Positions 8,428 to 63,445 of a DNA stretch of 64,000 nt are shown in pieces. The translations under genes were made by a program, and so were the position numbers. The notes under the pieces are model-generated. The model did not search any database. It was given only the letters and a program-made list of their open reading frames with translations, and was not told the DNA's origin. Position 1 is the stretch's first letter, and each line of letters opens with the position of its first letter. Source of the stretch: Isurus oxyrinchus. Taxonomy: Eukaryota. The stretch lies in the NCBI GenBank assembly GCA_026770705.1, contig JANJGN010000926.1, positions 1 through 64,000 of the forward strand. The letters run 5' to 3'.

Positions 8428-8524
8428 GTAGAGACTCCAGTAAATGGACAGTAGGATTGTTCACGGCTGGGATCATGTTGAGTGTGTTCCTGGCTGGAAT
8501 CTTCATCTTCATCTGTGTGAGAAA
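8428..8524 (+). CDS. Gene A transmembrane exon (uncharged, inhibitory type)
   Basis: tttttacag/GTAAGT; RDSSKWTVGLFTAGIMLSVFLAGIFIFICVRK; phase 1-2. Confidence 0.9.
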
Positions 8525-10867: not shown

Positions 10868-12709
10868 GTGTGAAATGGGGAGAGGGGGTGAGGAGGTTTG
10901 TGGATGGAGGCAGGCATTGTAATTCCTTGGAACATGAGACAACCCACTGGGGAAGAGGGGGAGAGAGGGAGGAAGGGACTGAATGAGTCTGTGGTTGGTG
11001 TGGTTTGGAATGAAATGTTTCCCCAGAGACGACTTGATGCTGAGTCAGTGTGGACAGAGATTCAGTGTCTCTCTTTCTCCCAGTCTGTCACTCNNNNNNN
11101 NNNNNNNNNNNNNNNNNNNNNNNNNNNNNNNNNNNNNNNNNNNNNNNNNNNNNNNNNNNNNNNNNNNNNNNNNNNNNNNNNNNNNNNNNNNNNNNNNNNN
11201 NNNNNNNNNNNNNNNNNNNNNNNNNNNNNNNNNNNNNNNNNNNNNNNNNNNNNNNNNNNNNNNNCTCTCTCCTCCTTTAACATGGTCCTTATTAACTGGC
11301 TTTGTTAACTCAGCTTTTTGTCACCTGTCCCTTATATCTCATTATTTGTCTCAGAGATGGATTTATATGTGGTTAACAATCCCCTGAAGAGCTTTGGGAC
11401 AGTTTGCTACTTTAAGTGTGCTATATAAATGCAAGTTGTTGTAGTAACGTTGATCTGCCTCGATTCAGAATGCAAACACGGAGAATCCTTCGGCAGGGCA
11501 TGTGTGCAACAGGCTCGCAATAAATGCATTGCACGGCAACAACTAAGCATGTCCTTTGATGCTGATGCATCCCAGTCCTTCTGTGTGGACACATCACAAC
11601 CGAGGGACTGCCTGACTGCGTGCAGCCAACATGGCCGAATAGTAATTAGCAGAAATGTGACATCACTGAACATTGTTAACATTTCAGAATGTGCTTTCTG
11701 AATTCTGCAACTTGTTTATTCTGTGATAGATTACAAGAAGCTTTTGCATTTTCTATAATATTACATTTATTGTCACAAGGGATTGAAATGCCCAGACAAC
11801 TCGGTACAGATATATTATTATTAAACATCTTACTCTGGGACAACCTCCCTGCTCCAATCTGTTAATTCATGTCATTGCATTTCCCCACCAAATTATGTAA
11901 ATTCCTGTGTCCACATTTATCATGAGAATTTCCCATGTAAACATGTCACACTGTACTTACAGTCTCTTGCCAGTGGTGGTGCTGTAAGCACACCAAGTAC
12001 TTTCTCAGCGATTGCAGCACATCTCCCAGTTGTCTTTACAATATTATTAAGATACAGGGAATGGGGACAATCTTCACACTGTGGTTACGATGTTAAGACA
12101 GAGAGCTGGTGAAACCACCCCCCCCCTCCCGAGGCAACATCTGTTCTGGCTGTGAGACCCCCACACTTATCCCACGCCCCCTGTTCATTTCTGCATCCCT
12201 GCTCTAACTTAGCGCTTTTGGACATGAAGGGCGGGGCCCTCAGGAAAGTGTGGAAGGGCTGCCCATCGCAGCTGGAAAAAGGAACCTGGCAGGTCTCCCA
12301 GGACAGAATGGCAGAGTGGGGGAGGGGGAGCAGTGGGGTCAATATTCACACCCTCCAGGAGGGCAGCATCACTCATCAGGGAAACGCAGGGCCGAATGCC
12401 CCTCCACCCGGAACGCTGTCCACCATGATTTCAACGTCCTTCACCGGAAGCCTTTTGAAGGTTGCCGTGGCCAGATTTGAATCGGCCGCTGGGTCACCAT
12501 TGGTCCAAGCAGTCACTAAGCACCCACCTCTGCCCGCCCCTTTGCACTCATTCTGCAGACACATCTTATGCTGGCAGGCCTTTATTAGCCCGGCTGCGTA
12601 AAATCGCAGCGCGGAGCTGATCGCGGGCGATAGTCGGATTCCTCACCGCCCCCAGCCCTGTGCACCCCTGCCGAGGGCAAAAATCTGACCTGAAGGATCC
12701 CAGCAGAAT

Positions 12710-15834: not shown

Positions 15835-18440
15835 GTCAGTAGTGAGGGAGTGCTGCACTGTCAGAGGGTCAGTAGTGAGGGAGTGCTGCACTGTCGAAAG
15901 GTCAGTACTGAGGGAGTGCTGCACTTTCGGAGGGTCATTACTGAGGGTGTGTTGCACTGTCAGAGGGTCAGTACTGAGGGAGTGCTGCACTGTCAGAGGG
16001 TCAGTATTGAGGGAGTGCTGCACTGTCAGAGGGTCAGTACTGAGGGAGTACTGCACTGTCAGCGGGTCAGTAGTGAGGGAGTGCTGCACTGTCAGATGAT
16101 CAGTATTGAGGGAGTGCTGCACTGTCAGAGGGTCAGTACTGAGGGAGTGCTGCACTGTCAGAGGGTCAGTAGTGAGGGAGTGCTGCACTGTCAGAGGGTC
16201 AGTAGTGAGGGAGTGCTGCACTGTCGGAGGGTCAGTACTGAGGGAGTGCTGCATTGTCAGAGGGTCAGTATTGAGGGAGTGCTGCACTGTCAGAGGGTCA
16301 GTATTGTGGGAGTCCAGCACTGTTGGAGGGTCAGTACTGAGGGAGTGCTGCACTGTCAGAGGGTCAGTATTGAGGGAGTGCTGCACTGTCAGAGGGTCAG
16401 TACTGAGGGAGTGCTGCACTGTCAGAAGGTCAGTACTGAGGGAGTGCTGCACTGTCAGAGGGTCAGTACGGAGGGAGTGCTGCACTGTCAGAGGGTCAGT
16501 ACTGAGGGAGTACTGCACTGTCAGAGGGTCAGTAGTGAGGGAGTGCTGCACTGTCAGAGGGTCAGTATTGAGGGAGTGCTGCACTGTTGGAGGGTCAGTA
16601 CTGAGGGAGTGTTGCACTGTCAGAGTGTCAGTACTGAGGGAGTGTTGCACTGTCAGAGGGTCAGTATTGAGGGAGTGCTGCACTGTCAGAGGGTCAGTAC
16701 TGAGGGAATGCTGCACTGTTGGAGGGTCAGTATTGAGGGAGTGCTGCACTGTCAGAGGGTCAGTATTGAGGGAGTGCTGCACTGTCGGAGGGTCAGTACT
16801 GAGGGAGTGCTGCACTGTCAGAGGGTCAGTACTGAGGGAGTGCTGCACTGTCAGAGGTTCAGTAGTGAGGGAGTGCTGCACTGTCAGAGAGTCAGTAGTG
16901 AGGGAGTGCTGCACTGTCGGAGGGTCAGTACTGAGGGAGTGCTGCACTGTCAGAGGGTCAGTATTGAGGGAGTGCTGCACTGTCAGAGGGTCAGTATTGA
17001 GGGAGTGCAGCACTGTTGGAGGGTCAGTACTGAGGGAGTGCTGCACTGTCAGAGGGTCAGTATTGAGGTAGTGCTGCACTGTCAGAGGGTCAGTACTGAG
17101 GGAATGCTGCACTGTCAGAAGTTCAGTACTGAGGGAGTGCTGCACTGTCAGAGGGTCAGTACTGAGGGAGTGCTGCACTGTCAGAGGGTCAGTAGTGAGG
17201 GAGTGCTGCACTGTCGGAGGGTCAGTATTGAGGGAGTGCTGCACTGTCAGAGGGTCAGTAGTGAGGGAGTGCTGCACTGTCGGAGGGTCAGTACTGAGGG
17301 AGTGCTGCACTGTCAGAGGGTCAGTATTGAGGGAGTGCTGCACTGTCAGAGGGTCAGTATTGAGGGAGTGCAGCACTGTTGGAGGGTCAGTACTGAGGGA
17401 GTGCTGCACTGTCAGAGGGTCAGTATTGAGGGAGTGCTGCACTGTCAGAGGGTCAGTACTGAGGGAGTGCTGCACTGTCAGAGGGTCAGTACGGAGGGAG
17501 TGCTGCACTGTCAGAGGGTCAGTACTGAGGGAGTACTGCACTGTCAGCGGGTCAGTAGTGAGGGAGTGCTGCACTGTCAGAGGATCAGTATTGAGGGAGT
17601 GCTGCACTGTTGGAGGGTCAGTACTGAGGGAGTGTTGCACTGTCAGAGTGTCAGTACTGAGGGAGTGTTGCACTGTCAGAGGGTCAGTATTGAGGGAGTG
17701 CTGCACTGTCAGAGGGTCAGTATTCCGGGAGTGCTGCACTGTTGGAGGGTCAGTATTGAGGTAGTGCTGCACTATCAGAGGGTCAGTATTGAGGGAGTGC
17801 TGCACTGTCGGAGGGTCAGTACTGAGGGAGTGCTGCACTGTCAGAGGGTCAGTACTGAGGGAGTGCTGCACTGTCAGAAGTTCAGTAGTGAGGGAGTGCT
17901 GCACTGTCAGAGGGTCAGTAGTGAGGGAGTGCTGCACTGTCGGAGGGTCAGTACTGAGGGAGTGCTGCACTGTCAGAGGGTCAGTATTGAGGGAGTGCAG
18001 CACTGTTGGAGGTTCAGTACTGAGGGAGTGCTGCACTGTCAGAGGGTCAGTATTGAGGGAGTGCTGCACTGTCAGAGGGTCAGTACTGAGGGAGTGCTGC
18101 ACTGTCAGAAGGTCAGTAATGAGGGAGTGCTGCACTGTCAGAGGGTCAGTACTGAGGGAGTGCTGCACTGTCAGAGGGTCAGTACGGAGGGAGTGCTGCA
18201 CTGTCAGAGGGTCAGTACTGAGGGAGTGCTGCACTGTTGGAGGGTCAGTATTGAGGGAGTGCTGCACTGTCAGAGGGTCAGTATTGAGGGAGAGCTGCAC
18301 TGTCGGAGGGTCAGTACTGAGGGAGTGCTGCACTGTCAGAGGGTCAGTACTGAGGGAGTGCTGCACTGTCGGAGGGTCAGTATTGAGGGAGTGATGCACT
18401 GTCAGAGGGTCAGTACTGAGGGAGTGCTGCACTGTTGGAG
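15835..18440 (+). repeat. 33-bp minisatellite (GAGGGAGTGCTGCACTGTCAGAGGGTCAGTACT), about 79 units, intronic
   Basis: Direct inspection; 11-aa periodicity in the spurious 890/910-aa ORFs. Confidence 0.97.
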
Positions 18441-18625: not shown

Positions 18626-18874
18626 GGTAAACAGAACGTGCTGATTACTGAGCCCCGGAACACAACCAGAGACACAACTAGTGAGGGGGAGACCCCAGCT
18701 CCCCGGGATCTCTCTGAAGGTCCAGTGGGAGGCGATGTTGGACATGGGAACCCCGACAATACCGACGAGCTTCTCTACGCCAACATCAACTTTTCAAAGC
18801 TGCCCGGCGGTGACAGGACTGTGCACAGGAGCGAGGACACGGAATACACACAGATCAGGTTCCAGAAAAACTGA
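18626..18874 (+). CDS. Unit B terminal cytoplasmic exon: ITIM (LLYANI) plus ITSM (TEYTQI)
   Basis: Acceptor intact, open to TGA; paralog of 10619-10867. Confidence 0.88.
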   Translation, partial: GKQNVLITEPRNTTRDTTSEGETPAPRDLSEGPVGGDVGHGNPDNTDELLYANINFSKLPGGDRTVHRSEDTEYTQIRFQKN

Positions 18875-19067
18875 GTGTGAAACAGGGAGCGGGGCTGTGG
18901 GGTGTGTGCAGCCAACATGGCCAAATAGTAATGAACACAAATATGATGTTGCTCAACTTTTTTTTATTGGTTCTGAGTGAGCTTTCTGAATGCTGCACCT
19001 TTTTCCATGCTGTAAAAGATTGTGAGAAGCTTATGGGTTATGTATAATTTAACATCTGTTAATACAA

Positions 19068-53462: not shown

Positions 53463-53837
53463 TTGGACTATCACAAGTGTGGAAAGGTGACACTCCAGGA
53501 GAGGTGACAGCGCAGGAAGGTTCGTGTGTACAGATTCCATGTAATTACAGTTATCCATCATATTTAGTAGCGAGATCACCAGTCGGAATCTGGTATATGA
53601 GAAGGAATTGGGAAAAATGGAATGAACGGTCTATAGCCTTTCACTCCAAGGATCATAATCGCGAGTTACCACAGTTCCACCATCGGACCCGGCTGTCTGG
53701 AGACCTGAAAGATGGCGACTGTTCCCTGATTATAAACAACATCAGACGGGAAGATGCAGGATATTATTTATTCAGCCTAGAATTTGACAACAGGAATAGA
53801 TACAACGACCGTCCTGAAACCCAGCTTCACGTTTCTG
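53463..53837 (+). CDS. Gene E V-set exon 1, intact frame, essential Arg replaced by Ser
   Basis: ccctag/GTAAGT, 375 nt; CVQIPC and GDCSLII kept; DAGYYLFSLE (AGC 53774-53776) versus DAGPYFFRIE. Confidence 0.92.
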
Positions 53838-54099: not shown

Positions 54100-55835
54100 G
54101 TCCGTGTAAACCCCCGTCCCATCTCCAGCCTCTCTTTCCCCTCCAAAGTCCTGCAACCTGTTTCCATCTCCCGAATCTGTTCCCATCTTTCCCGGAACTC
54201 CATGTTTGAATCCCTCCAATCAGGTTCCCACCCCAGCCACTGTGCTGAAACAGCTCTTATCAAGGTCACAAATGGCATCCTGTGTGACTGTGACAAAGGT
54301 CAACTTTCCCTCCTCGTCCTTCTCGATCTGTCTGCAGCCTTTGACACGCTCGACCACACCATCCTCCTCCAACACCTCTCCACTGTCGTCCAGCTGGGTG
54401 GGACTGCTCTCCCCTGGCTCCATTCTTATCCATCTCATCGTAGCCAGAGAATCACTTGCAATGGCTTTGCAGCATCATCTGAACAGTGTTAGTTTTCACC
54501 TGTCCACTGAGGATGCCCAGCTCTACCTCACCACCACCTCTCTCGACTCCTCCACTGCTGCTAAATTATCAGGCTGCTTATCCGACATCCAGTACTGGAT
54601 GGGCAGAAATTCCCTCCAATTAAATATTGGAAAGACTGAAGCCATTGTCTTCATTCCCCGCTCCAAACTCTGTTCCCTCGCTACCAACTCCATTCCTCTC
54701 CTTGGCAGCTCTCTGAGATTGAAGCCAATCTGTTCACAGCTTTGTTGTCCCATTTGATCCTGAGATGAGCTTCCGGCCTCCTATCTGCGCCCTCACTAAC
54801 ACCGTCTATTTCCACCTCCGTAACATCGCACGACGTCACCCTGTCTCAGCTCATCTGCTGCTGAAACCCTCATCCACGCCTTCATTACCTCCAGTCTCGA
54901 CTGTTCCAACACACGCTCTACACTCCATAAACTTGAGGCCATCCAAAACTGCTGACCACGTCCTTACTCACACCAAGTCCCGTTCCCTTATCACCCGCTC
55001 TGCTCGATGACCGAGACTGGCTCCTGGTCAAGCAAAGTCTCAATGTCCAAATTTTCATCTTTGTTTCCTCACTATCTCTGTAATCTCCTTGTCCTCCTCC
55101 AGTACCTACAACCATCCCATTCTCTGTAACCTCTTCAAGCCTCTACCGCTTCCCTATATCTGTAAATTCATCCTGCCCAACAAACCTACCAATCTCTGCA
55201 ACCTCCTCCAGCCACTACAAACCTCCCTATTTCTGTAACTTCCTCCTGCCCCTAAAAGCTTCCCTATCTCTGTAGCCTGCTCCAGTCCCGACAACTTTCC
55301 CTGCCCCTGTAACCTGCCCCAGTCACTACAACCCTCCCTACCTCTGCAAACTCCTCCAGACCCTACACTCTCCCAATCTCTCTTAACTTTTCCAGCCCCT
55401 ACAAACCTCCCTATCGCTATAACTCCTCCAATCACTACAAACCTCGCTATCTCTGTAACCTCCTCCAGCCCCTACAACCCTCCCTATCTCTGTAACCTCC
55501 TCCAGACCCACCAACCTTCAGAGGTCTCTGCGCTCCTCCAATTCCAGCCTCTTGACCATCCCCCGATCTCAACACTCTAACATCGGTGGCCATGCCTTCA
55601 GCTGCCTGGGGACCGAGCTCCGTAATACCCTCCCTTAAGCCCTCTCCATCCCTCACACTCACTCTCTCTCTCTCACTAACCATTTCATCCCTCTTTTAAG
55701 TTTCTCCATAACACCGATCCCTTCTGGTCAGCTGTCGCTAATATCTCCACATGTGTCTGGGTGACATACTTTGTTTTATGACGCTCCTGTGTAGCACCTT
55801 GGGGTGATTTGTCATGTTAAAGTTGTTGTGAAAAT
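54100..55835 (+). mobile_element. L2-type LINE RT remnant with tandemly amplified 3' region (about 55070-55520)
   Basis: RPIS.L.F.SKVL, ETALIKVTN.IL, LVLLDLSAAFDTLDH.ILL, EDAQLY, LQLNIGKTEAI. Confidence 0.9.
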
Positions 55836-56389
55836 ATAAGTTGTTGCCCTTTGACCCTCGACCCCAGATTGAGTCTTATTTTTGAGGGAATGTACAACCT
55901 GCTTAGATTTCTGACCAAAGTGTCATTTGATTATTTTTATTGAGCGAATGCCAAGCCCCGATACCGAGCGAGAGCCTCCTCATTTGCTGAGTTTAAGGTG
56001 ATGAGTCAGCCCCTTAGTCCGTAGAGGGGATTCTCCTCGGTAATGTACAGCCTTGTTTGTGTCTCTCCACAAGCGCATGAGGGATTTGTACAGAGGCTGC
56101 AGCGCTGGAGGGGGTCTGCACAGGGGTCCTGGCCTGTCCTGAGCTGGTTTTAGCAAGGACCACTCTGGCCTTGGCAGCTGAAAGCCAGCCATTGGACAGA
56201 CAGGGCCTGTCACAAGGAGCCTGTTAGTCACTCCCCCCCGTGTCTCCTGTGCTCGGATCCAGACCATGTTGGCTGGTGGATCTGGCTCAGGAAGGGTCCT
56301 CCCCATGGGACCCCCAGATGGAAGGTGGGTCGAGCGGGTCAGTCACTTGCATGTTTATTCTGCAGCTTTAATATTTTAAGAAGGTAAGA

Positions 56390-57183
56390 ATGTAGGAACA
56401 TAAGAAATAGGGACAGGAGCAGGCCATTCGGCCCCTCGAGCCTGCCCTCGCTGATCTGGTTGTGGCCTTAACTCCATTTTCCTGCCTGTCCCCCAAACCC
56501 TTGACTCCCTTGTCGATCAAAAACCTGCCTCACTCAGCCTTGAGTCTATTCAATGGCCCAGCCTCCACTGCTCTCTGGGGAAGGGAATTCCACAGGCTAG
56601 CGCCCCTCTGAGAGAGGAAATTCCTCCTCATCTCAGTCTTAAATGGGAGAGTCCTCATTCCGAAACTGTGCTCCCTGGTTCTAGATTCCCCCACGAGGGG
56701 GAAACATCCTCCCAGCATCCACCCTGTCAAGCCCCCTCGGAATTGGATATGTTTCAATAAGGTCACCCCTCATTCTTCTAAACTCCAATGGATACAGGCC
56801 CAACCTGCTCAACATTTCCTCACAGGACAAACCCTTTAATCCCAGGAATCAGCCCAGTGAAGCTTCTCTGAACTGCCTGTACACAATGATCCTGTTACAA
56901 TCTCACTAACGCCCTGTGCAGCTGTTGCAAGACTTCCCTCCTTTTATACTCCATCCCTTTGCAATAAAGGCCAACATTCCACTTGCCTTCCTCATTCTGT
57001 GGTGTTCCTGAATGCTGACTTTCTGTGATTCATGTACAAGGACACCCAGATCCCTCTGTACTGCATTCTGCAGCCTGTCTCCAGTTAAATAATATTCTGA
57101 TTTTCTATTCTTCCTGCCAAAATAATTTGTTGCCATTCTCCTCAGTATTGACCATCCCCCCAATTCAGCCTCATCTGTAAATT
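56390..57183 (-). mobile_element. CR1-type LINE 3' fragment
   Basis: Minus strand QRDLGVLVHESQK, KASGMLAFIAKG, FKTEMRRNF.SQR...LWNSLPQ. Confidence 0.88.
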
Positions 57184-57241
57184 TTGAGTCTAGTGGATCC
57201 ACAAGCCATCCAGAGATAAATATTGAGATTTCTCTCCCCAG

Positions 57242-57610
57242 TTGGACTGTCACAAGAGTGGAAAGGTGACACTCCACGAGAGGTGACAGCTCAGGAAGGT
57301 TCGTGTGTACAGATTCCATGTCATTACAGTTATCCATCGTGTCTGGAAAACCAACCGCGAGGTGGACTCTGGTTTAATAATGAGAAACAGATTCCCTGGG
57401 CTCCCATTGCCTTTCACTCCAAGGATCACAGTCACGAGTTACCACGGTTCCGCCATCGGACCCGGCTGTCTGGAGACCTGAAAGATGGCGACTGTTCCCT
57501 GATTATAAACAACATCAGACGGGAAGATGCAGGACCTTATTTTTTCAGAATAGAATTTGACAATGGTCCGAGACATAACTATTACCCTGTAACCCGGCTT
57601 CACGTTTCTG
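57242..57610 (+). CDS. Gene E V-set exon 2, intact, essential Arg present
   Basis: ccccag/GTAAGT, 369 nt; EWKG, CVQIPC, GDCSLII, YFFRIE. Confidence 0.93.
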
Positions 57611-58689
57611 GTAAGTGCTGTGTTATAATTACTCAACAATTCACATCCAACACTCAATGGGAAATAACACAATCTGTGACGTTTACATATTAACACAAAA
57701 CACAGGTTATTATAACACACTGTCTGATTCTCAATAACCTGGTGATAGCTTCCAGTTCAGTTCTAAAGCAACCTCTAATACTCACTTTAATATCAATGAT
57801 TAAATGTATTGACTGTGTCTATCAATGTTATCAGTTTATCCACTCCCATCAATCTCTCAAATCCTGTCTTGAAGTCTGACATATCGACAGAAGAAAGATT
57901 TACATTTCTACAGCGCCTTTCACCACCCTAGAGTTCCTACCCTAAATCTCTCCCTCTCCCTCTTCCTCTCCCTCTCTCTCTCTCTCTGTCTCTTTATCTC
58001 TGTCTCTCCATAACACCGACCTCTTCTGGTCAGCTGTCGCTAATATCTACACGTGTCTGGGTGACATACTTTATTTTATGACGCTCCTGTGTAGCACCTT
58101 GAGGTGATTTGTCATGTTAAAGTTGTTGTGAAAATATAAGTTGTTGCCCTTTGACTCTCGACCCCAGATCGAGTCTTATTTTTGAGGGAATGTACAACCT
58201 CCTTAGATTTCTGACCAAAATGTCATTTGATTATTTTTATTGAGCGAATGCCAAGCCCCGATACCGAGCGAGAGCCTCCTCATTTGCCGAGTTTAGGGTG
58301 ATGAGTCAGCACCTTAGTCTGTAGAGGGGATTCTCCTCGGTAATGAGCAGCCTTGTTTGTGTCTCTCCACAAGCGCATGAGGGGTTTGTACAGAGGCTGC
58401 AGCGCTGGAGGGGGTCTGCACAGGGGTCCTGGCCTGTCCTGAGCCGGTTTTAGCAAGGACCACTCTGGCCTTGGCAGCTGAAAGCCAGCCATTGGACAGA
58501 CGGGGCCTGTCACAAGGAGCCTGTTAGTCACTCCCCCCAGTGTCTCCTGTGCTCAGATCTAGACCATGTTGGCTGGTGGATCTGGCTCAGGAAGGGTCCT
58601 CCCCATGGGACCCCCAGATGGAAGGTGGGTCGAGCGGGTCAGTCACTTGCATGTTTATTCTGCAGCTTTAATATTTTAAGATGGTAAGA

Positions 58690-59482
58690 ATGTAGGAACA
58701 TAAGAAACGGGGACAGGAGCAGGCCATTCGGCCCCTCGAGCATGCTCTCACTGATCTGGTTGTTGCCTTAACTCCATTTTCCTGCCTGTCCCCCAAACCC
58801 TTGACTCCCTTGTCGATCAAAAACCTGCCTCACTCAGCCTTAAGTCTATTCAATGGCCCAGCCTCCACTGCTCTCTGGGGAAGAGAATTCCACAGGCTAG
58901 CGCCCCTCTGAGAGAGGAAATTCCTCCTCATCTCAGTCTTAAATGGGAGAGCACTCATTCCAAAACTGTGCTCCCTGGTTCTAGATTCCCCCACGAGGGG
59001 GAAACATCCTCCCAGCATCCACCCTGTCAAGCCCCCTCGGAATCGGATATGTTTCAGTAAGGTCAGCCCTCATTCTTCTAAACTCCAATGGATACAGGCC
59101 CAACCTGCTCAACATTTCCTCACAGGACAAACCCTTTAATCCCAGGAATCAGCCCAGTGTAGCTTCTCTGAACTGCCTGCACACAATGATCCTGTTAAAA
59201 TCTCACTAACGCCCTGTGCAGCTGTTGCAAGACTTCCCTCCTTTTATACTCCATCCCTTTGCAATAAAGGCCAACATTCCACTTGCCTTCCTCATTCCAT
59301 GGTTTTCCTGAATGCTGACTTTCTGTGATTCATGTACAAGGACACCCAGATCCCTCTGTACTGCATTCTGCAGCCTGTCTCCAGTTAAATAATATTCTGA
59401 TTTTCTATTCTTCCTGCCAAAATAATTTGTTGCCATTCTCCTCAGTATTGACCATCCCCCAATTCAGCCTCATCTGTAAATT
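58690..59482 (-). mobile_element. CR1-type LINE 3' fragment (duplicate)
   Basis: Copy of 56390-57183. Confidence 0.88.
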
Positions 59483-59540
59483 TTGAGTCTAGTGGATCCA
59501 CAAGCCATCCAGAGATAAATATTGAGATTTCTCTCCCCAG

Positions 59541-59909
59541 TTGGACTGTCACAAGAGTGGAAAGGTGACACTCCACGAGAGGTGACAGCTCAGGAAGGTT
59601 CCTGTGTACAGATTCCATGTCATTACAGTTATCCATCGTGTCTGGAAAACCAACCGCGAGGTGGAGTCTGGTTTAATAATGAGAAACAGATTCCCTGGGC
59701 TCCCATTGCCTTTCACTCCAAGGATCACAGTCACGAGTTACCACGGTTCCACCATCGGACCTGGCTGTCTGGAGACCTGAAAGATGGCGACTGTTCCCTG
59801 ATTATAAACAACATCAGACGGGAAGATGCAGGACCTTATTTTTTCAGAATAGAATTTGACAATGGTCCGAGACATAACTATTACCCTGTAACCCGGCTTC
59901 ACGTTTCTG
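59541..59909 (+). CDS. Gene E V-set exon 3, intact, essential Arg present
   Basis: Differs from V exon 2 by three residues (L/V, R/H, R/W). Confidence 0.93.
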
Positions 59910-60376
59910 GTAAGTGCTGTGTTATAATTACTCAACAATTCACATCCAACACTCAATGGGAAATAACACAAACTGTGATGTTTACATATTAACACAAAAC
60001 ACAGGTTATTATAACACACTGTCTGATTCTCAATAACCTGATGATAGCTTCCAGTTCAGTCCTAAAGCAACCTCTAATACTTACTTTAATATCAATGATT
60101 AAATGTGTTGACTGTGTCTATCAATGTTATCAGTTTATCCACTCCCATCAATCTCTCAAATCCTGTCTTGAAGTCTGACATATCGACAGAAGTAAGATTT
60201 ACATTTCTACAGCGCCTTTCACCACCCTAGAGTTCCCACCCTAAACCTCTCCCTCTCCCTCTTCCTCTCCCTATCTCTCTCTCTCTCGCTGTGTCTCTCT
60301 GTCTCTTTCTCTCTGTCTTTCCATAACACCGACCTCTTCTGGCCAGCTGTCACTAATATCTCCACATGTGTCACAG

Positions 60377-60664
60377 ATAAACCCACGATATTCCCTGCTG
60401 AAATTATTGCAGGAAAGCGTGTGGATGTAAGCTGCACCTTCAACACAACGTGCAATGGAACAGCAGCATCTGTCTTAACCTGGGACACTCCCACTGACGT
60501 ACCTGGATCAGTCTCAAACACTGTAACTCAGCATGGTGTCACTCTGACCTATACTTCTGTTCTGACCCTGACCCCATCACTCAAACACCACGGACACACT
60601 CTCAGCTGCAGAGTGAGATATCCATCTGTTTCATCGGAGCGGACCCTCATACTAACTGTGCAAG
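60377..60664 (+). CDS. Gene E C2-a exon; native acceptor deleted, in-frame cryptic CAG acceptor at 60374-60376
   Basis: DKPTIFPAE...TLILTVQ open, donor GTAAGA intact. Confidence 0.78.
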
Positions 60665-60987
60665 GTAAGAACGGACACCCTTCATTCTACATCAGCACTC
60701 CCTCAGCGCTGACCCTCTGACAGTGCAGCCCGTTCTCAGTGTCCACATTCTCATGCCTCTCAAAGTGCTTCACAGTCGATAGAAGTTAACTGATCTTTAT
60801 TTGATTGTTGCTGAATGAAGAGACAAGCTGTCTAAACTTTACATCTCACACACATTATTTTCCATGGCAACACCTCCTCCAATCAGAGACCACTTGCTGA
60901 TTAACCAGCACTCTCTTCCCTTTAAATATAAATTGTTGTTCACTTTCTGTTGGTAAACCTGCAATCTGCCTTGTTGAGTCCGGTCCT

Positions 60988-61139
60988 GACATCTGAATAT
61001 CACAATGAACAGAACAAGTTCCAACAATGAGCTGTGGTTGGTGATTCCTCACATTACATCCAGGGACACTGGAGACTATCAGTGTGCTCAGAGAATGAAC
61101 ATGGAGCAGTGGAGGGGTTCATAACCATCACTGTGGAAC
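60988..61139 (+). pseudogene. Gene E C2-b 3' remnant with 1-bp deletion; 5' half missing
   Basis: MNRTSSNNELWLVIPHITSRDTGDYQC then TGTGCTCAGAG versus TGTGTGGCAGAG; no acceptor. Confidence 0.85.
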
Positions 61140-62253
61140 GTTAGTTAAGGCAAACTTCAACATCTCTCTCAGATTGAAACACTACAAAAACACACATAAA
61201 TATCCAGCCTTAAATAGACACCTGCAGACAAACAATCCCACATCTATGAGCACACACAAAGGCACACTCACAAACAAACACACTAGCACATACTCCCCTG
61301 TGGATTACCTGACCTCCCTCAGTGCTGCACCGGAGAGTTGACCTGGATTCTGGGATTTGTGTTCCCTTTCATATTTATGGAAGAATATGGAAATTGCAAA
61401 GTCTATTACAGACACTCAGATGCACAGAGATACTCACAGATACTCTCTGCCTCTCCAACTCTCTATCCTACTTTAAGAACCTTCCTGAAATCTAACTCTT
61501 TGACCAGTCACCTGTCCCAATTCCTCCTTACGTGATTTTGTGTGAAATTTTGTTTGAGTATCTGAGAGTAAGAGGGAAGTGGAGAGGTTTAGGAAGGGAA
61601 TTCCTGTTGCTGAAAAGCTTACATCAAGTTCTCAGCTTTCCAGTGCCCATTTTTCACATGATGTCCATGTTCATAATGGGGATTGCCTATGTAAACGTCA
61701 CGCTGTAGTTACACTCTCCCACCAGTGGTAGCACGGTAACACTTAACCCTTGCATCTCCAAGCTTTTCAAGCAATTTCACTTCCTAATTTCCTACTATTC
61801 ACCTCAACCATTCCCTGTGGGAGCGAGTTCCATATTCTCCCCTCTCTCTGGGTAAAGATTGGAACTGTTTATTAAGCGGGGGGTGTAAGTCCGTGGGGGA
61901 GTCCATCTCGATCCTGCCCGATTCGCACACACGTCCGAGATGGATTTTCACCCGGCACTAAACGTTTCCAGAATTTTCTACAGCACAATCCTGTACACAG
62001 CAATAGAGAGAAACATTGGACAGGGAGTCCAACAGCACAATGATCCATTCTCACCAATGTTCCACGCTAAGGAGAAAGTTCCGATTGTCCACTCTTAGAG
62101 TGTTTACAATGAAAACATTCATTCCACATTGAATCCCAGTGGATGGGTCAATATTACAGCAAATGTTGCAGTGATATGAAGTTTGATTGTTCAGCCAGAG
62201 TGAGAGATTGAAAGCGGAGAGTCAGTGATGATTTCTTTCTGTGTGTTCTCTAG

Positions 62254-62393
62254 ACAGTGGAGGAGAGATTCTGCACGTGATCCTGATCCTGGGAATACGA
62301 GCTGTGATATTCCTTGTGGCTGTGGTTATCACTATCACTGGAGTCTGTGTCTGGGAGAGACAAACAGTGAAAGGAAGTCGACAGACTGTTTGA
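62254..62393 (+). CDS. Gene E activating-type transmembrane/short-tail exon with intramembrane Arg
   Basis: Pyrimidine tract plus TAG at 62251-62253; phase-1 reading DSGGEILHVILILGIRAVIFLVAVVITITGVCVWERQTVKGSRQTV*; not shown in the ORF track in this frame. Confidence 0.8.
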
Positions 62394-62776
62394 AGCTTTG
62401 TACAGCAACAATCTGGTCAGTCAGTGCGGACAAATAACGTGTGATGTTGTGTTAAGTTGTAATGAAACTGGTCAGTGTCCTGGTTATAATCATCTCCGTA
62501 TCATCGAGTCATTCCAGCAATGGAGGAGGACATTTGGCCCATTGAGTCTATGCTGTCTCTCTGTAAAGCAATCCACTCAGTCCCATCCCCTGCTCTATCC
62601 CCGTATCCCTGCAAATTTATTTCCAATTTCCGTCCAATTTCCTTTTGAAATTGTTCATCGAATAGGAATGAACAGAAATGTGACGTTGCTAAACTCTGTT
62701 CTCTGATTGGAATGTGCTTTCTGAATGCTGCACCTTTTTCACGCTGCGATAGATTGTAAGAAGCATTTGGCTTATG

Positions 62777-62782
62777 AATAAA
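62777..62782 (+). terminator. Candidate polyadenylation signal AATAAA for gene E
   Basis: About 385 nt after the stop, within a block homologous to sequence downstream of the inhibitory tail exons. Confidence 0.4.
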
Positions 62783-63125
62783 ATTACATTGATTAACTCA
62801 AGTGATTAAAATGCTCAGCCTGTTCTGTAGATATTTAAAGATTAAAATTCTTGTTTTGCTGCAAAATACTTGGCTCAAAGACATAGCTTCCTGTTGTCAC
62901 GTTTTCCAATCAGATGAATTCCTCTGTCCATCTTTATAATAGAAATTTCCAATGTAAACATGTCACATTGTAACTGCACACACTTGCCAGTGGCTGGTGT
63001 GATACCAAAGCTGTCTTGCTGCAGAGAAACAGCGAGAAATATTCCTGTTGTGTGCATGAACTTCATGTTAGCATGAGACACAGGCATCAGATGAAATTTT
63101 GTGCAATTTGTACAATGTTCTTTAG

Positions 63126-63445
63126 ACAGTGCAGCACTCCCTCAGATCAGACCCTCCGACAATGCAGCACTCCCTCAGTTCAAACCCTCTGACAGTGCAG
63201 CACTCCCTCAGTTCAGAACCTCCGACAGTGCAGCACTCCCTCAGTTCAGACCCTCTGACAGTGCAGCACTCTCTCAGTTCAGACCCTGTGACAGTGCAGC
63301 ACTCCCTCAGTTCAGACCCTCCGACAGTGCAGCACTTTCTCAGTTCAGACCCTGTGACAGTGCAGCACTCCCTCAGTTCAGACCCTCCGACAGTGCAGCA
63401 CTCCCTCAGTTCAGACCCTCCGACAGTGCAGCTCTCCCTCAGTTC
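63126..63445 (-). repeat. 33-bp minisatellite variant (GACAGTGCAGCACTCCCTCAGTTCAGACCCTCC), about 9-10 units
   Basis: Direct inspection. Confidence 0.92.

What the first reader, a model, noticed from the sequence alone, without database searches (positions are those of the whole stretch)
62254..62393. Hidden activating TM exon with intramembrane arginine
Missed by the ORF track. Splicing C2-a (ends in G at 60664) to 62254 gives in-frame D-SGGE-ILHVILILGIRAVIFLVAVVITITGVCVW-ERQTVKGSRQTV*. The Arg (CGA 62298-62300) lies inside the hydrophobic stretch. Established: a basic TM residue with a short tail recruits ITAM adaptors (Arg in Siglec-14 with DAP12; Arg in LILRA, FcalphaRI, GPVI with FcRgamma). 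Which adaptor is used here is unknown. The mutable CGA codon is intact here while CGA codons in gene A have become TGA twice.
Basis: partly seen in the sequence, partly recalled or inferred. Interest (0 to 1): 0.85.

Follow-up and report, generated by a model that had tools for sequence, protein, structure and literature searches.

The report
Shark Siglec arginine membrane-anchor exon
This is a real, spliced last exon of a shark Siglec-like immune receptor gene; it encodes a membrane anchor with a buried, always-conserved arginine and almost no tail, the usual build of an activating receptor that signals through a separate adaptor chain, and automatic annotation already shows it in other sharks.

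Summary
Exon 62254-62393 (+) follows a strong acceptor. It reads D-SGGEILHVILILGIRAVIFLVAVVITITGVCVWERQTVKGSRQTV* when joined in phase 1 to the C2 exon that ends at 60664.

- **Junction:** one spliced contig in public run X1 has exactly this join, 60664|62254, with GT..AG ends.
- **Family:** a whole-library phmmer search with the exon found only shark proteins. Each match lies at the extreme C-terminus.
- **Arginine:** counting later hits, 16 of 16 cassettes, including the window, keep I-L-G-I-R-A.
- **Other annotation:** RefSeq models of great white shark and catsharks carry the same '...TVQ|DSGGE...' junction on a V + C2 Siglec body.
- **Reuse:** the cassette also closes models named CD22-like, pIgR-like, sialoadhesin-like (one V domain) and SLAM-like. 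It looks like a shuffled module.
- **Neighbour:** gene A in the window has an uncharged membrane exon and an ITIM/ITSM-like tail, so the locus resembles a paired-receptor cluster.

Signalling through an adaptor is inferred, not shown, and the adaptor is unknown. In this gene the C2 exon has lost its native acceptor.

The scan found this cassette before on other pieces of the same genome (s1-868598, s1-300793). I class it as a new member of a known kind, of moderate interest.

The parts
62254..62393 (+). Terminal coding exon: short stalk (D-SGGE), membrane span with Arg, 12-residue tail, and TGA stop at 62391-62393
   Evidence: sequence, frame, acceptor. (spliced contig). (cassette family, 62-89 bits against 3 or less for all other proteins).
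62298..62300 (+). CGA codon of the intramembrane arginine
   Evidence: Arg is invariant in 16 of 16 cassettes.
62229..62253 (+). Pyrimidine-rich tract and AG acceptor of the terminal exon
   Evidence: tgatttctttctgtgtgttctctag|. The joint ends at this AG.
60377..60664 (+). C2-set exon (C2a), phase 1-1, whose donor is spliced to 62254. Its 5' end uses an in-frame AG because the native acceptor is missing.
   Evidence: (PF08205, 6.6e-9).
60665..62253 (+). Intron removed in the observed joint (1589 nt, GT..AG)
   Evidence: table 5: 60662->62252, 'cut +2', both=2.
60990..61138 (+). Relic of the 3' half of a stalk Ig exon, with a frameshift at about 61088, lying inside the intron
   Evidence: tblastn with P0002 and P0003. 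(DNA similarity to the gene A stalk exons).
59541..59909 (+). V-set exon V3 with the Siglec FFRIEF arginine motif, phase 1-1
   Evidence: (Siglec-5/7/8, E about 1e-14).
57242..57610 (+). V-set exon V2, a 98% (aa) duplicate of V3 within a 2.3-kb tandem duplication
53463..53837 (+). V-set exon V1, which reads YYLFSLEF where the other V exons have FFRIEF (no binding-site Arg)
45828..45867 (+). Leader exon (MIGKSYFFLSLFQ, donor G|gtaat, phase 1) assigned to this gene as the nearest upstream leader
   Evidence: Matches the leaders of P0012 and P0016. Assignment to this gene is inferred.
62394..62860 (+). Probable 3' UTR. AATAAA at 62777; ATTAAA at 62805 and 62841.
   Evidence: An X1 contig covers 62380-62568 with no differences. 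The true end was not determined.
8457..8519 (+). Context: uncharged membrane exon of the inhibitory-type neighbour gene A (a second copy lies at 36691-36753)
18770..18880 (+). Context: gene A tail exon with ITIM LLYANI and the ITSM-like TEYTQI

Best explanation
Positions 62254-62393 are the last coding exon of a Siglec-like receptor gene of a lamniform shark. The great white shark is the closest relative found. The gene model is leader 45828, three V exons, one C2 exon, then this exon, with every junction in phase 1.

The exon supplies a five-residue stalk, one membrane helix with an arginine about one third of the way in from the outer face, and a 12-residue tail with no tyrosine. It belongs to a cassette (core I-L-G-I-R-A-x-I-F) found in lamniform, carcharhiniform and orectolobiform sharks. 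There it forms the C-terminus of models named Siglec-like, CD22-like, pIgR-like, sialoadhesin-like (one V domain) and SLAM-like.

The most likely mechanism is that the buried arginine pairs with a membrane aspartate of a disulfide-linked ITAM adaptor of the DAP12 / FcR-gamma / CD3-zeta type. That adaptor would be needed for surface expression and would signal through Syk-family kinases. The gene would then be the activating counterpart of the ITIM/ITSM-bearing Siglec-like neighbours.

Shown: the exon, its frame, its splice to C2a, membership of the cassette, invariance of the Arg, and the inhibitory-type neighbour. Inferred: adaptor pairing, the activating sign of the signal, and sialic-acid binding.
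For: - **Splice:** one X1 contig joins 60664 to 62254 with GT..AG ends. The two shared letters (AG) show direct abutment. X1 depth is exon-like over V, C2a and this exon plus the 3' UTR, and low in the introns.
- **Library search:** phmmer of the 45-aa exon against 1.84 billion representatives gave 8 true hits (E 3e-13 to 4e-5). All are shark proteins and all match at the extreme C-terminus.
- **Full models:** SP+V+C2+cassette models of 270-273 aa exist in Scyliorhinus canicula and Carcharodon carcharias, with the junction ...TVQ|DSGGE or ...TVQ|YSGGE.
- **Closest relative:** C. carcharias P0017 is 96.7% identical to V3 and 93.5% identical to this exon.
- **Cassette HMM:** it splits 104 proteins cleanly, 16 at 62-89 bits and the rest at 3 bits or less. 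Arg and eleven other positions are invariant among 13 distinct sequences.
- **Fold proxy:** an AlphaFold model of P0020 gives one continuous helix, residues 228-263, that contains R240.
- **V exon:** it is Siglec-type, with YFFR aligned to Siglec-5.
- **Neighbours:** the C2a exon is 94% (aa) and 97% (nt) identical to the neighbours' copies. Gene A carries an uncharged membrane exon plus LLYANI/TEYTQI.
- **Literature:** a basic membrane residue with DAP12 coupling is the accepted design of Siglec-14/-15/-16 (PMC6288428).
Against: - No adaptor was identified or tested.
- A 2014 survey found no FcR-gamma homologue in sharks (PMC4016189, based on old data).
- The RNA evidence is a single contig in one run whose RNA status is only a guess. 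Its upstream side (27 nt or more of C2a) cannot be told apart from paralogous C2a exons.
- X1 also holds an unspliced contig across the acceptor (61955-62262).
- In this gene the native C2a acceptor (ttag|ATTTCACAG) has been replaced. Only a weaker in-frame AG at 60375-60376 remains, and no V3-to-60377 joint was listed.
- Conservation does not show a significant one-sided helical pattern (p = 0.25).
- There was no DNA from other species, so no dN/dS.
Confidence: 0.7

Rival explanations
1. The exon is real, but the receptor is a tail-less, non-signalling form. It could be a decoy or a purely adhesive lectin. The arginine would then serve another role, such as ER retention and quality control, regulated surface expression, or pairing with a partner that has no ITAM.
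For: The tail has no known motif. No adaptor is known for sharks, and FcR-gamma was reported absent (PMC4016189). Batoid relatives have short-tailed forms with uncharged membrane spans (P0055, P0058, P0061, P0065), so tail-less Siglec-like receptors exist without a buried charge.
Against: Arg and its neighbours (ILGIRA, I+3, F+4) are invariant across five ectodomain families and three shark orders. A simple anchor would not need this. In every system studied, this design couples to an ITAM or YxxM adaptor (PMC6288428, PMC8102735).
Confidence: 0.15
2. The exon is intact, but gene E in this genome is decaying and makes no useful protein. The spliced contig would then come from a leaky or paralogous transcript.
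For: - The native C2a acceptor is lost.
- A half-exon relic with a frameshift lies in the intron.
- V1 lacks the binding-site Arg, and V2/V3 are a very recent duplication.
- The neighbouring genes are pseudogenes: gene A has two TGA stops, and the 33-kb copy has its donor changed from GT to GA.
- The only V-to-C2a joint seen in X1 carries the paralog-type 'ATT'.
Against: All six exons have open frames and compatible phases. An in-frame AG 6 nt inside the exon keeps the frame. Both CpG-containing CGA codons of this exon are intact. The 3' UTR is covered without differences in X1. The great white orthologue-like model P0018 has the same architecture.
Confidence: 0.13
3. It is a chance open frame next to a chance AG.
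For: None beyond its short length (46 codons).
Confidence: 0.01

Closest known systems
Human Siglec-14 (paired with Siglec-5) and Siglec-16 (paired with Siglec-11)
   Same: - Siglec V-set domain plus C2 domain(s).
- A basic residue in the membrane span and a short tail.
- A neighbouring ITIM/ITSM-bearing gene with a near-identical ectodomain exon. Here C2a is 97% identical at DNA level within a 326-bp patch.
- Pseudogenisation of one partner also occurs in the primate pairs (PMC4042635, PMC5701461, PMC6288428).
   Different: - No detectable sequence relation between the membrane exons. The exon hits only shark proteins and nothing in the PDB.
- The V domain is about equally distant from Siglec-5, -7, -8, -10, CD33 and MAG, so there is no one-to-one orthology. 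The RefSeq names 'Siglec-12/13/14' are automatic.
- The adaptor here is unknown.
- There are up to three V exons in series.
Siglec-15
   Same: V + C2 ectodomain, a basic membrane residue, and conservation across vertebrates.
   Different: The V exon matches Siglec-15 far less well (E 1.3e-6) than it matches the CD33-related Siglecs and MAG (1e-14 to 1e-12). From my own knowledge, Siglec-15 has Lys rather than Arg and a long tail.
Macaque activating KIR3DS (membrane and tail region taken from KIR2DL4)
   Same: An Arg-bearing membrane/tail module was moved by recombination onto a different ectodomain, and the module sets the adaptor choice (PMC8102735). This is the best analogue for a shuffled cassette.
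   Different: That case involves one family and a recent primate event. The shark cassette sits on five kinds of ectodomain in three orders.
RefSeq models XP_072325011 (S. torazame 'CD33-like'), S. canicula 'Siglec-14 isoform X2' (P0012), and C. carcharias 'Siglec-12' / 'CD33-like' (P0017, P0018, P0020)
   Same: Same cassette, same junction and same V + C2 body. P0017 and P0018 are 93.5% identical in this exon.
   Different: These are automatic predictions with no published study that I could find. The window gene lacks the 'DFT' start of C2a and may carry three V exons.

Membership tests
Siglec family (I-type lectins) | N-terminal V-set domain with the conserved arginine of the F strand (YFFR-x-E type motif) | tested here: met
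   V2 and V3 read PYFFRIEF, aligned to GSYFFRVE of Siglec-5. PF07686 and PF24518 pass their cut-offs. V1 reads YYLFSLEF, so it does not meet this feature.
Siglec family (I-type lectins) | V-set domain followed by C2-set domain(s), with the Siglec cysteine pattern (C-x-x-x-P-C) | tested here: met
   SCVQIPC aligns to LCVLVPC of Siglec-5. C2a matches PF08205 at 6.6e-9 and the second domains of CD33 and MAG.
Siglec family (I-type lectins) | Binding of sialylated glycans | not testable with these tools
   Needs a glycan array or a binding assay.
Adaptor-coupled activating immunoreceptors (Siglec-14/-15/-16, LILRA, activating KIR design) | A basic residue inside the membrane span | tested here: met
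   Arg is the 11th residue of a 29-residue uncharged stretch. It lies inside the predicted helix in the model of P0020, a close homologue.
Adaptor-coupled activating immunoreceptors (Siglec-14/-15/-16, LILRA, activating KIR design) | A short cytoplasmic tail without ITIM, ITSM or ITAM | tested here: met
   The tail is ERQTVKGSRQTV, with no Tyr and the stop inside the exon. No frame with an ITIM-like motif can be joined downstream, because the stop lies inside this exon.
Adaptor-coupled activating immunoreceptors (Siglec-14/-15/-16, LILRA, activating KIR design) | Physical, Arg-dependent association with DAP12, FcR-gamma, CD3-zeta or DAP10 | not testable with these tools
Paired activating/inhibitory receptors | A neighbouring inhibitory gene with a near-identical ectodomain | tested here: met
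   C2a is 94% (aa) and 97% (nt) identical, and V is 87% (aa) identical, to gene A. Gene A has an uncharged membrane exon and LLYANI/TEYTQI. Gene A carries two in-frame TGA stops in this assembly.
Shark ILGIRA Arg-membrane terminal cassette (defined here and in earlier scan reports) | A match to the cassette profile, at the C-terminus of the protein, joined in phase 1 after an Ig exon, with Arg present | tested here: met
   E 3e-13 to 4e-5 in the whole-library search. Members score 62-89 bits against 3 or less for non-members. The junction is the same as in P0001, P0017, P0018 and P0020.
Orthology to mammalian SIGLEC14 | A specific one-to-one relation of the V domain and the membrane exon | tested here: not met
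   The V exon scores alike against Siglec-5, -7, -8, -10, CD33 and MAG. The membrane exon has no hit outside sharks.

The most novel reading that the evidence does not exclude
The ILGIRA exon is a single portable 'activation module'. Galeomorph sharks would have shuffled it onto at least five Ig-superfamily receptor families (Siglec-like, CD22-like, pIgR-like, a one-V family, SLAM-like), all feeding one dedicated adaptor. Paired activating and inhibitory Siglecs would then have arisen independently in cartilaginous fish. If sharks truly lack FcR-gamma, the partner is either DAP12 or CD3-zeta, or an adaptor not yet described.
Probability: 0.35. Interest if true: 0.65.

Novelty: new member of a known kind. 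Interest (0 to 1): 0.45.

Why it matters
Activating Siglecs with a charged membrane span have been studied in mammals. For cartilaginous fish I found no published account.

This locus places an activating-type Siglec-like gene beside inhibitory-type paralogs in a shark. The cassette family gives a concrete handle, one invariant arginine in a 140-nt exon, for asking three questions:
- Which signalling adaptors already existed at the base of the jawed vertebrates?
- Is the paired-receptor arrangement ancient or convergent?
- How does exon shuffling spread a signalling module between receptor families?

For annotation, it shows that short terminal exons of this kind are missed by length-based ORF tracks.

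Tried and rejected
- **Paralogs in the window:** tblastn of the exon against the window found none (best E 0.029). DNA similarity to the neighbouring genes stops at 60696, just after C2a.
- **Pfam on the exon:** only sub-threshold noise (DNER_C 0.15, SPAR 0.2).
- **PDB sequence search with the exon:** no hit at E up to 10.
- **P0008 in the library search:** a low-complexity repeat protein, not a relative.
- **Batoid Arg-bearing span:** I tested whether the stingray span in P0093 (LAVRGVLF) belongs to the same cassette. It scores 1.5 bits, no better than inhibitory spans, so it is rejected as evidence.
- **Helical periodicity of conservation:** the variable face points away from the Arg, but the moment is not significant (p = 0.25).
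- **Region-restricted word searches:** searches with P0001 and P0002 added only three proteins.
- **The look-up of encoding contigs:** I therefore had no orthologous DNA, no dN/dS and no check of exon structure in other species.
- **Literature on shark adaptors:** searches for shark DAP12 or FcR-gamma gave only PMC4016189, which reports no FcR-gamma in sharks.
- **Spliced model:** Exons were searched one by one by reference. The fold was done on the database protein P0020 as a proxy.
- **Read laying:** given 4741 letters.

Full report
**Observation**

- A pyrimidine-rich tract and AG (tgatttctttctgtgtgttctctag|AC) precede an open frame that ends in TGA at 62391-62393.
- From 62256 the exon translates as SGGEILHVILILGIRAVIFLVAVVITITGVCVWERQTVKGSRQTV*.
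- The upstream C2-set exon ends ...GTG CAA G|gtaag at 60664, in phase 1. G+AC therefore gives Asp and the frame continues.
- The arginine codon is CGA at 62298-62300.
- The hydrophobic stretch has the highest Kyte-Doolittle score of any non-repeat + strand frame in the window (2.93 over 21 residues).
- The flanks are acidic outside and net +2 inside, which fits a type I membrane protein.
Gene A has TGA at 1215 and 3700 where paralogous exons keep CGA.

**Is it spliced?**

I laid contigs of four public runs on 58350-63090.
- Run X1 contains one contig that joins 60662 to 62252 with 'GT..AG (cut +2)'. This equals 60664|62254 exactly.
- The two ambiguous letters are the AG that ends both the exon and the intron, so the two sides abut directly.
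- X1 matches the window almost perfectly; for example, 62380-62568 shows no differences.
- X1 depth is high over V, C2a and this exon plus about 400 nt downstream. It is low in the unique intron parts (60735-60893 and 61212-61688).
- Limits: this is one contig in one run, and the RNA status of that run is a guess. The run also holds an unspliced contig over the acceptor (61955-62262). The C2a side of the joint cannot be told from paralogous C2a exons.
- AATAAA lies at 62777.

**Relatives**

The exon has no paralog within the window. I searched it by phmmer against 1.84 billion representative proteins.
- Eight true hits came back (E 3e-13 to 4e-5, 68-82% identity). Each match lies at the extreme C-terminus of the hit protein.
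- All eight are shark proteins:
  - Scyliorhinus torazame 'CD33-like', 'Siglec-12' and a hypothetical protein
  - Chiloscyllium punctatum 'Siglec-13' and 'CD22-like'
  - Hemiscyllium ocellatum 'CD22-like'
  - Rhincodon typus 'sialoadhesin-like', which has a single V domain
  - Mustelus asterias 'SLAM family member 9-like'
- Further searches added:
  - S. canicula 'Siglec-13' and 'Siglec-14 isoform X2' (272 and 273 aa: signal peptide, V, C2, cassette)
  - S. torazame 'pIgR-like'
  - Carcharodon carcharias 'Siglec-12' (P0017, P0018) and 'CD33-like' (P0020, 270 aa)
- The great white proteins are the closest. P0017 is 96.7% identical to V3 and 93.5% identical to this exon, so the window comes from a lamniform shark.
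- P0018 begins with part of a V domain of the same kind as V1 here, followed by a full V, C2a and the cassette. It looks orthologous to this gene.
- Siglec-type models in four species (P0001, P0011, P0017, P0018, P0020) read ...TVQ|DSGGE..., and P0012 reads ...TVQ|YSGGE....

**The cassette**

I built a local profile from the 16 cassettes, including the window.
- It separates 104 collected proteins cleanly. Members score 62-89 bits, and every other elasmobranch Siglec-like protein scores 3 bits or less.
- Among 13 distinct sequences, the invariant positions are I-L-G-I-R-A, then I+3, F+4, V+8, G+14, C+16 and V+17.
- The variable face points away from the Arg, but the helical moment is not significant (p = 0.25). 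I make no claim from it.
- A stingray protein with another Arg-bearing span (P0093) scores 1.5 bits and is not shown to be related.
- The cassette is therefore documented only in Lamniformes, Carcharhiniformes and Orectolobiformes. Absence elsewhere is not shown.
- An AlphaFold model of P0020, used as a proxy because the spliced model of this gene was not to be joined, gives two Ig domains and one helix at 228-263 that contains R240.

**The gene and its neighbours**

- The V exons are Siglec-type. V3 matches Siglec-5, -7, -8, -10, CD33, MAG and sialoadhesin at 1e-14 to 1e-11, with PYFFRIEF aligned to the sialic-acid-binding YFFRVE. Pfam V-set and Ig_CD22 pass their cut-offs.
- The coherent gene model has every junction in phase 1:

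| Exon | Coordinates |
|---|---|
| Leader | 45828-45867 |
| V1 | 53463-53837 |
| V2 | 57242-57610 |
| V3 | 59541-59909 |
| C2a | 60377-60664 |
| Terminal exon | 62254-62393 |

- V2 and V3 lie in a 2.3-kb tandem duplication.
- DNA identity to the two other C2a copies (2330-2655 and 33996-34317, 97%) is confined to 60371-60696.
- Upstream of 60371 the native acceptor, ttag|ATTTCACAG, has been replaced. The next AG (60375-60376) keeps the frame but drops three codons (D-F-T) and follows a weaker pyrimidine tract.
- The one V-to-C2a joint listed for X1 carries the paralog-type 'ATT'. Use of 60377 in this gene is therefore not shown.
- The intron holds a relic of the 3' half of a stalk Ig exon with a frameshift (60990-61138). 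This suggests descent from a longer V-C2-Ig(n)-cassette gene like P0002 or P0003.
- Gene A upstream has uncharged membrane exons (8457-8519, with a copy at 36691-36753) and a tail exon with LLYANI and TEYTQI. It is the inhibitory type, although it is broken by two TGA stops.

**Mechanism**

The build is that of Siglec-14, -15 and -16 and of other receptors that pair with DAP12 or FcR-gamma through a membrane Asp (PMC6288428): a buried Arg, a 12-residue tail without Tyr, and inhibitory neighbours with a near-identical ectodomain exon. Movement of an Arg-bearing membrane module between ectodomains, with the module fixing the adaptor, is known for macaque KIR (PMC8102735). I consider adaptor coupling the most likely function, at about 0.7.
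- Which adaptor is used cannot be read from the sequence.
- The position of the Arg is not diagnostic. It is the 11th of 29 residues here, and the 8th of 26 where Asp replaces His.
- The only paper I found reports no FcR-gamma in sharks, and it rests on 2014 data (PMC4016189).

**Rivals**

- A tail-less, non-signalling form: 0.15.
- A decaying gene whose last exon is still intact: 0.13.
- Chance: 0.01.

**Novelty**

The exon type is already present in automatic RefSeq annotation of at least eight shark species. I found no paper on shark Siglecs of this kind. Earlier reports of this scan described the same cassette on other pieces of this genome and reached the same reading (s1-868598, s1-300793). 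I treat those reports as leads, not support. Verdict: a new member of a known kind, of moderate interest.

Noticed in passing
window 60360-60700: The C2a exon sits in a 326-bp patch (60371-60696) that is 97% identical to the copies at 2330-2655 and 33996-34317. Unrelated sequence bounds it on both sides. The native acceptor ttag|ATT is replaced at the 5' edge, and a 33-bp satellite unit starts at 60693. This looks like a conversion tract or a rearrangement edge.
   Followed up: partly
window 60990-61138: A relic of the 3' half of a stalk Ig exon (HLNITMNRTSSNNELWLVIPHITSRDTGDYQCA / [17 protein letters not shown]) lies in the intron before the terminal exon, with a frameshift near 61088.
   Followed up: partly
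window 55743-60342: A 2.3-kb tandem duplication (period 2299-2300, 96-99% identity) carries V exons V2 and V3. All three V exons are phase 1-1, so they can be used in series or skipped. Great white models P0017 and P0018 have two V domains in series.
   Followed up: partly
window 34289-34291: The C2a copy at 34004-34289 has its donor changed from GT to GA (CAAG|gaacgt). Its V exon is reduced to a 26-residue relic at 33228-33305. This copy is a pseudogene.
   Followed up: partly
window 30350, 32503, 44067, 45828: There are four leader exons of the MIGKSYFLLSLLQ type, more than the number of intact downstream gene bodies.
   Followed up: no
window 15835-18440 (-), 25797-26611 (+), 63125-63445 (+): Large arrays of a 33-bp satellite (consensus GACAGTGCAGCACTCCCTCAGTTCAGACCCTCC) flank the Siglec-like genes. 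Single units sit at rearrangement edges, for example 60693-60740.
   Followed up: no
proteins P0055, P0058, P0061, P0065, P0093 (skates and a stingray): Batoid Siglec-like proteins have other short-tailed membrane ends. One type reads 'SWKC...VWAACCRN' with a 6-7 residue tail. One stingray form has an Arg in the span (LAVRGVLF). Neither matches the shark cassette profile.
   Followed up: partly
protein P0099 (Chiloscyllium plagiosum 'Siglec-11'): The cassette lies at residues 47-79, inside the model and followed by a C2a domain. This is probably an annotation that runs two neighbouring genes together.
   Followed up: no
In human, HAMP lies beside MAG and CD22 (my own knowledge). The shark cluster may therefore be syntenic with the MAG/CD22 locus rather than with the CD33-related cluster.
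   Followed up: no
window 62658: Contigs of X1, X19 and X20 share a loose end (...TGTGTGCAGCCAACATGG) just before 62658. From 62659 to 62999 the sequence resembles an interspersed repeat also found at 11636, 18924, 21134 and 40051. This is either a repeat boundary or a structural difference in the 3' UTR.
   Followed up: no
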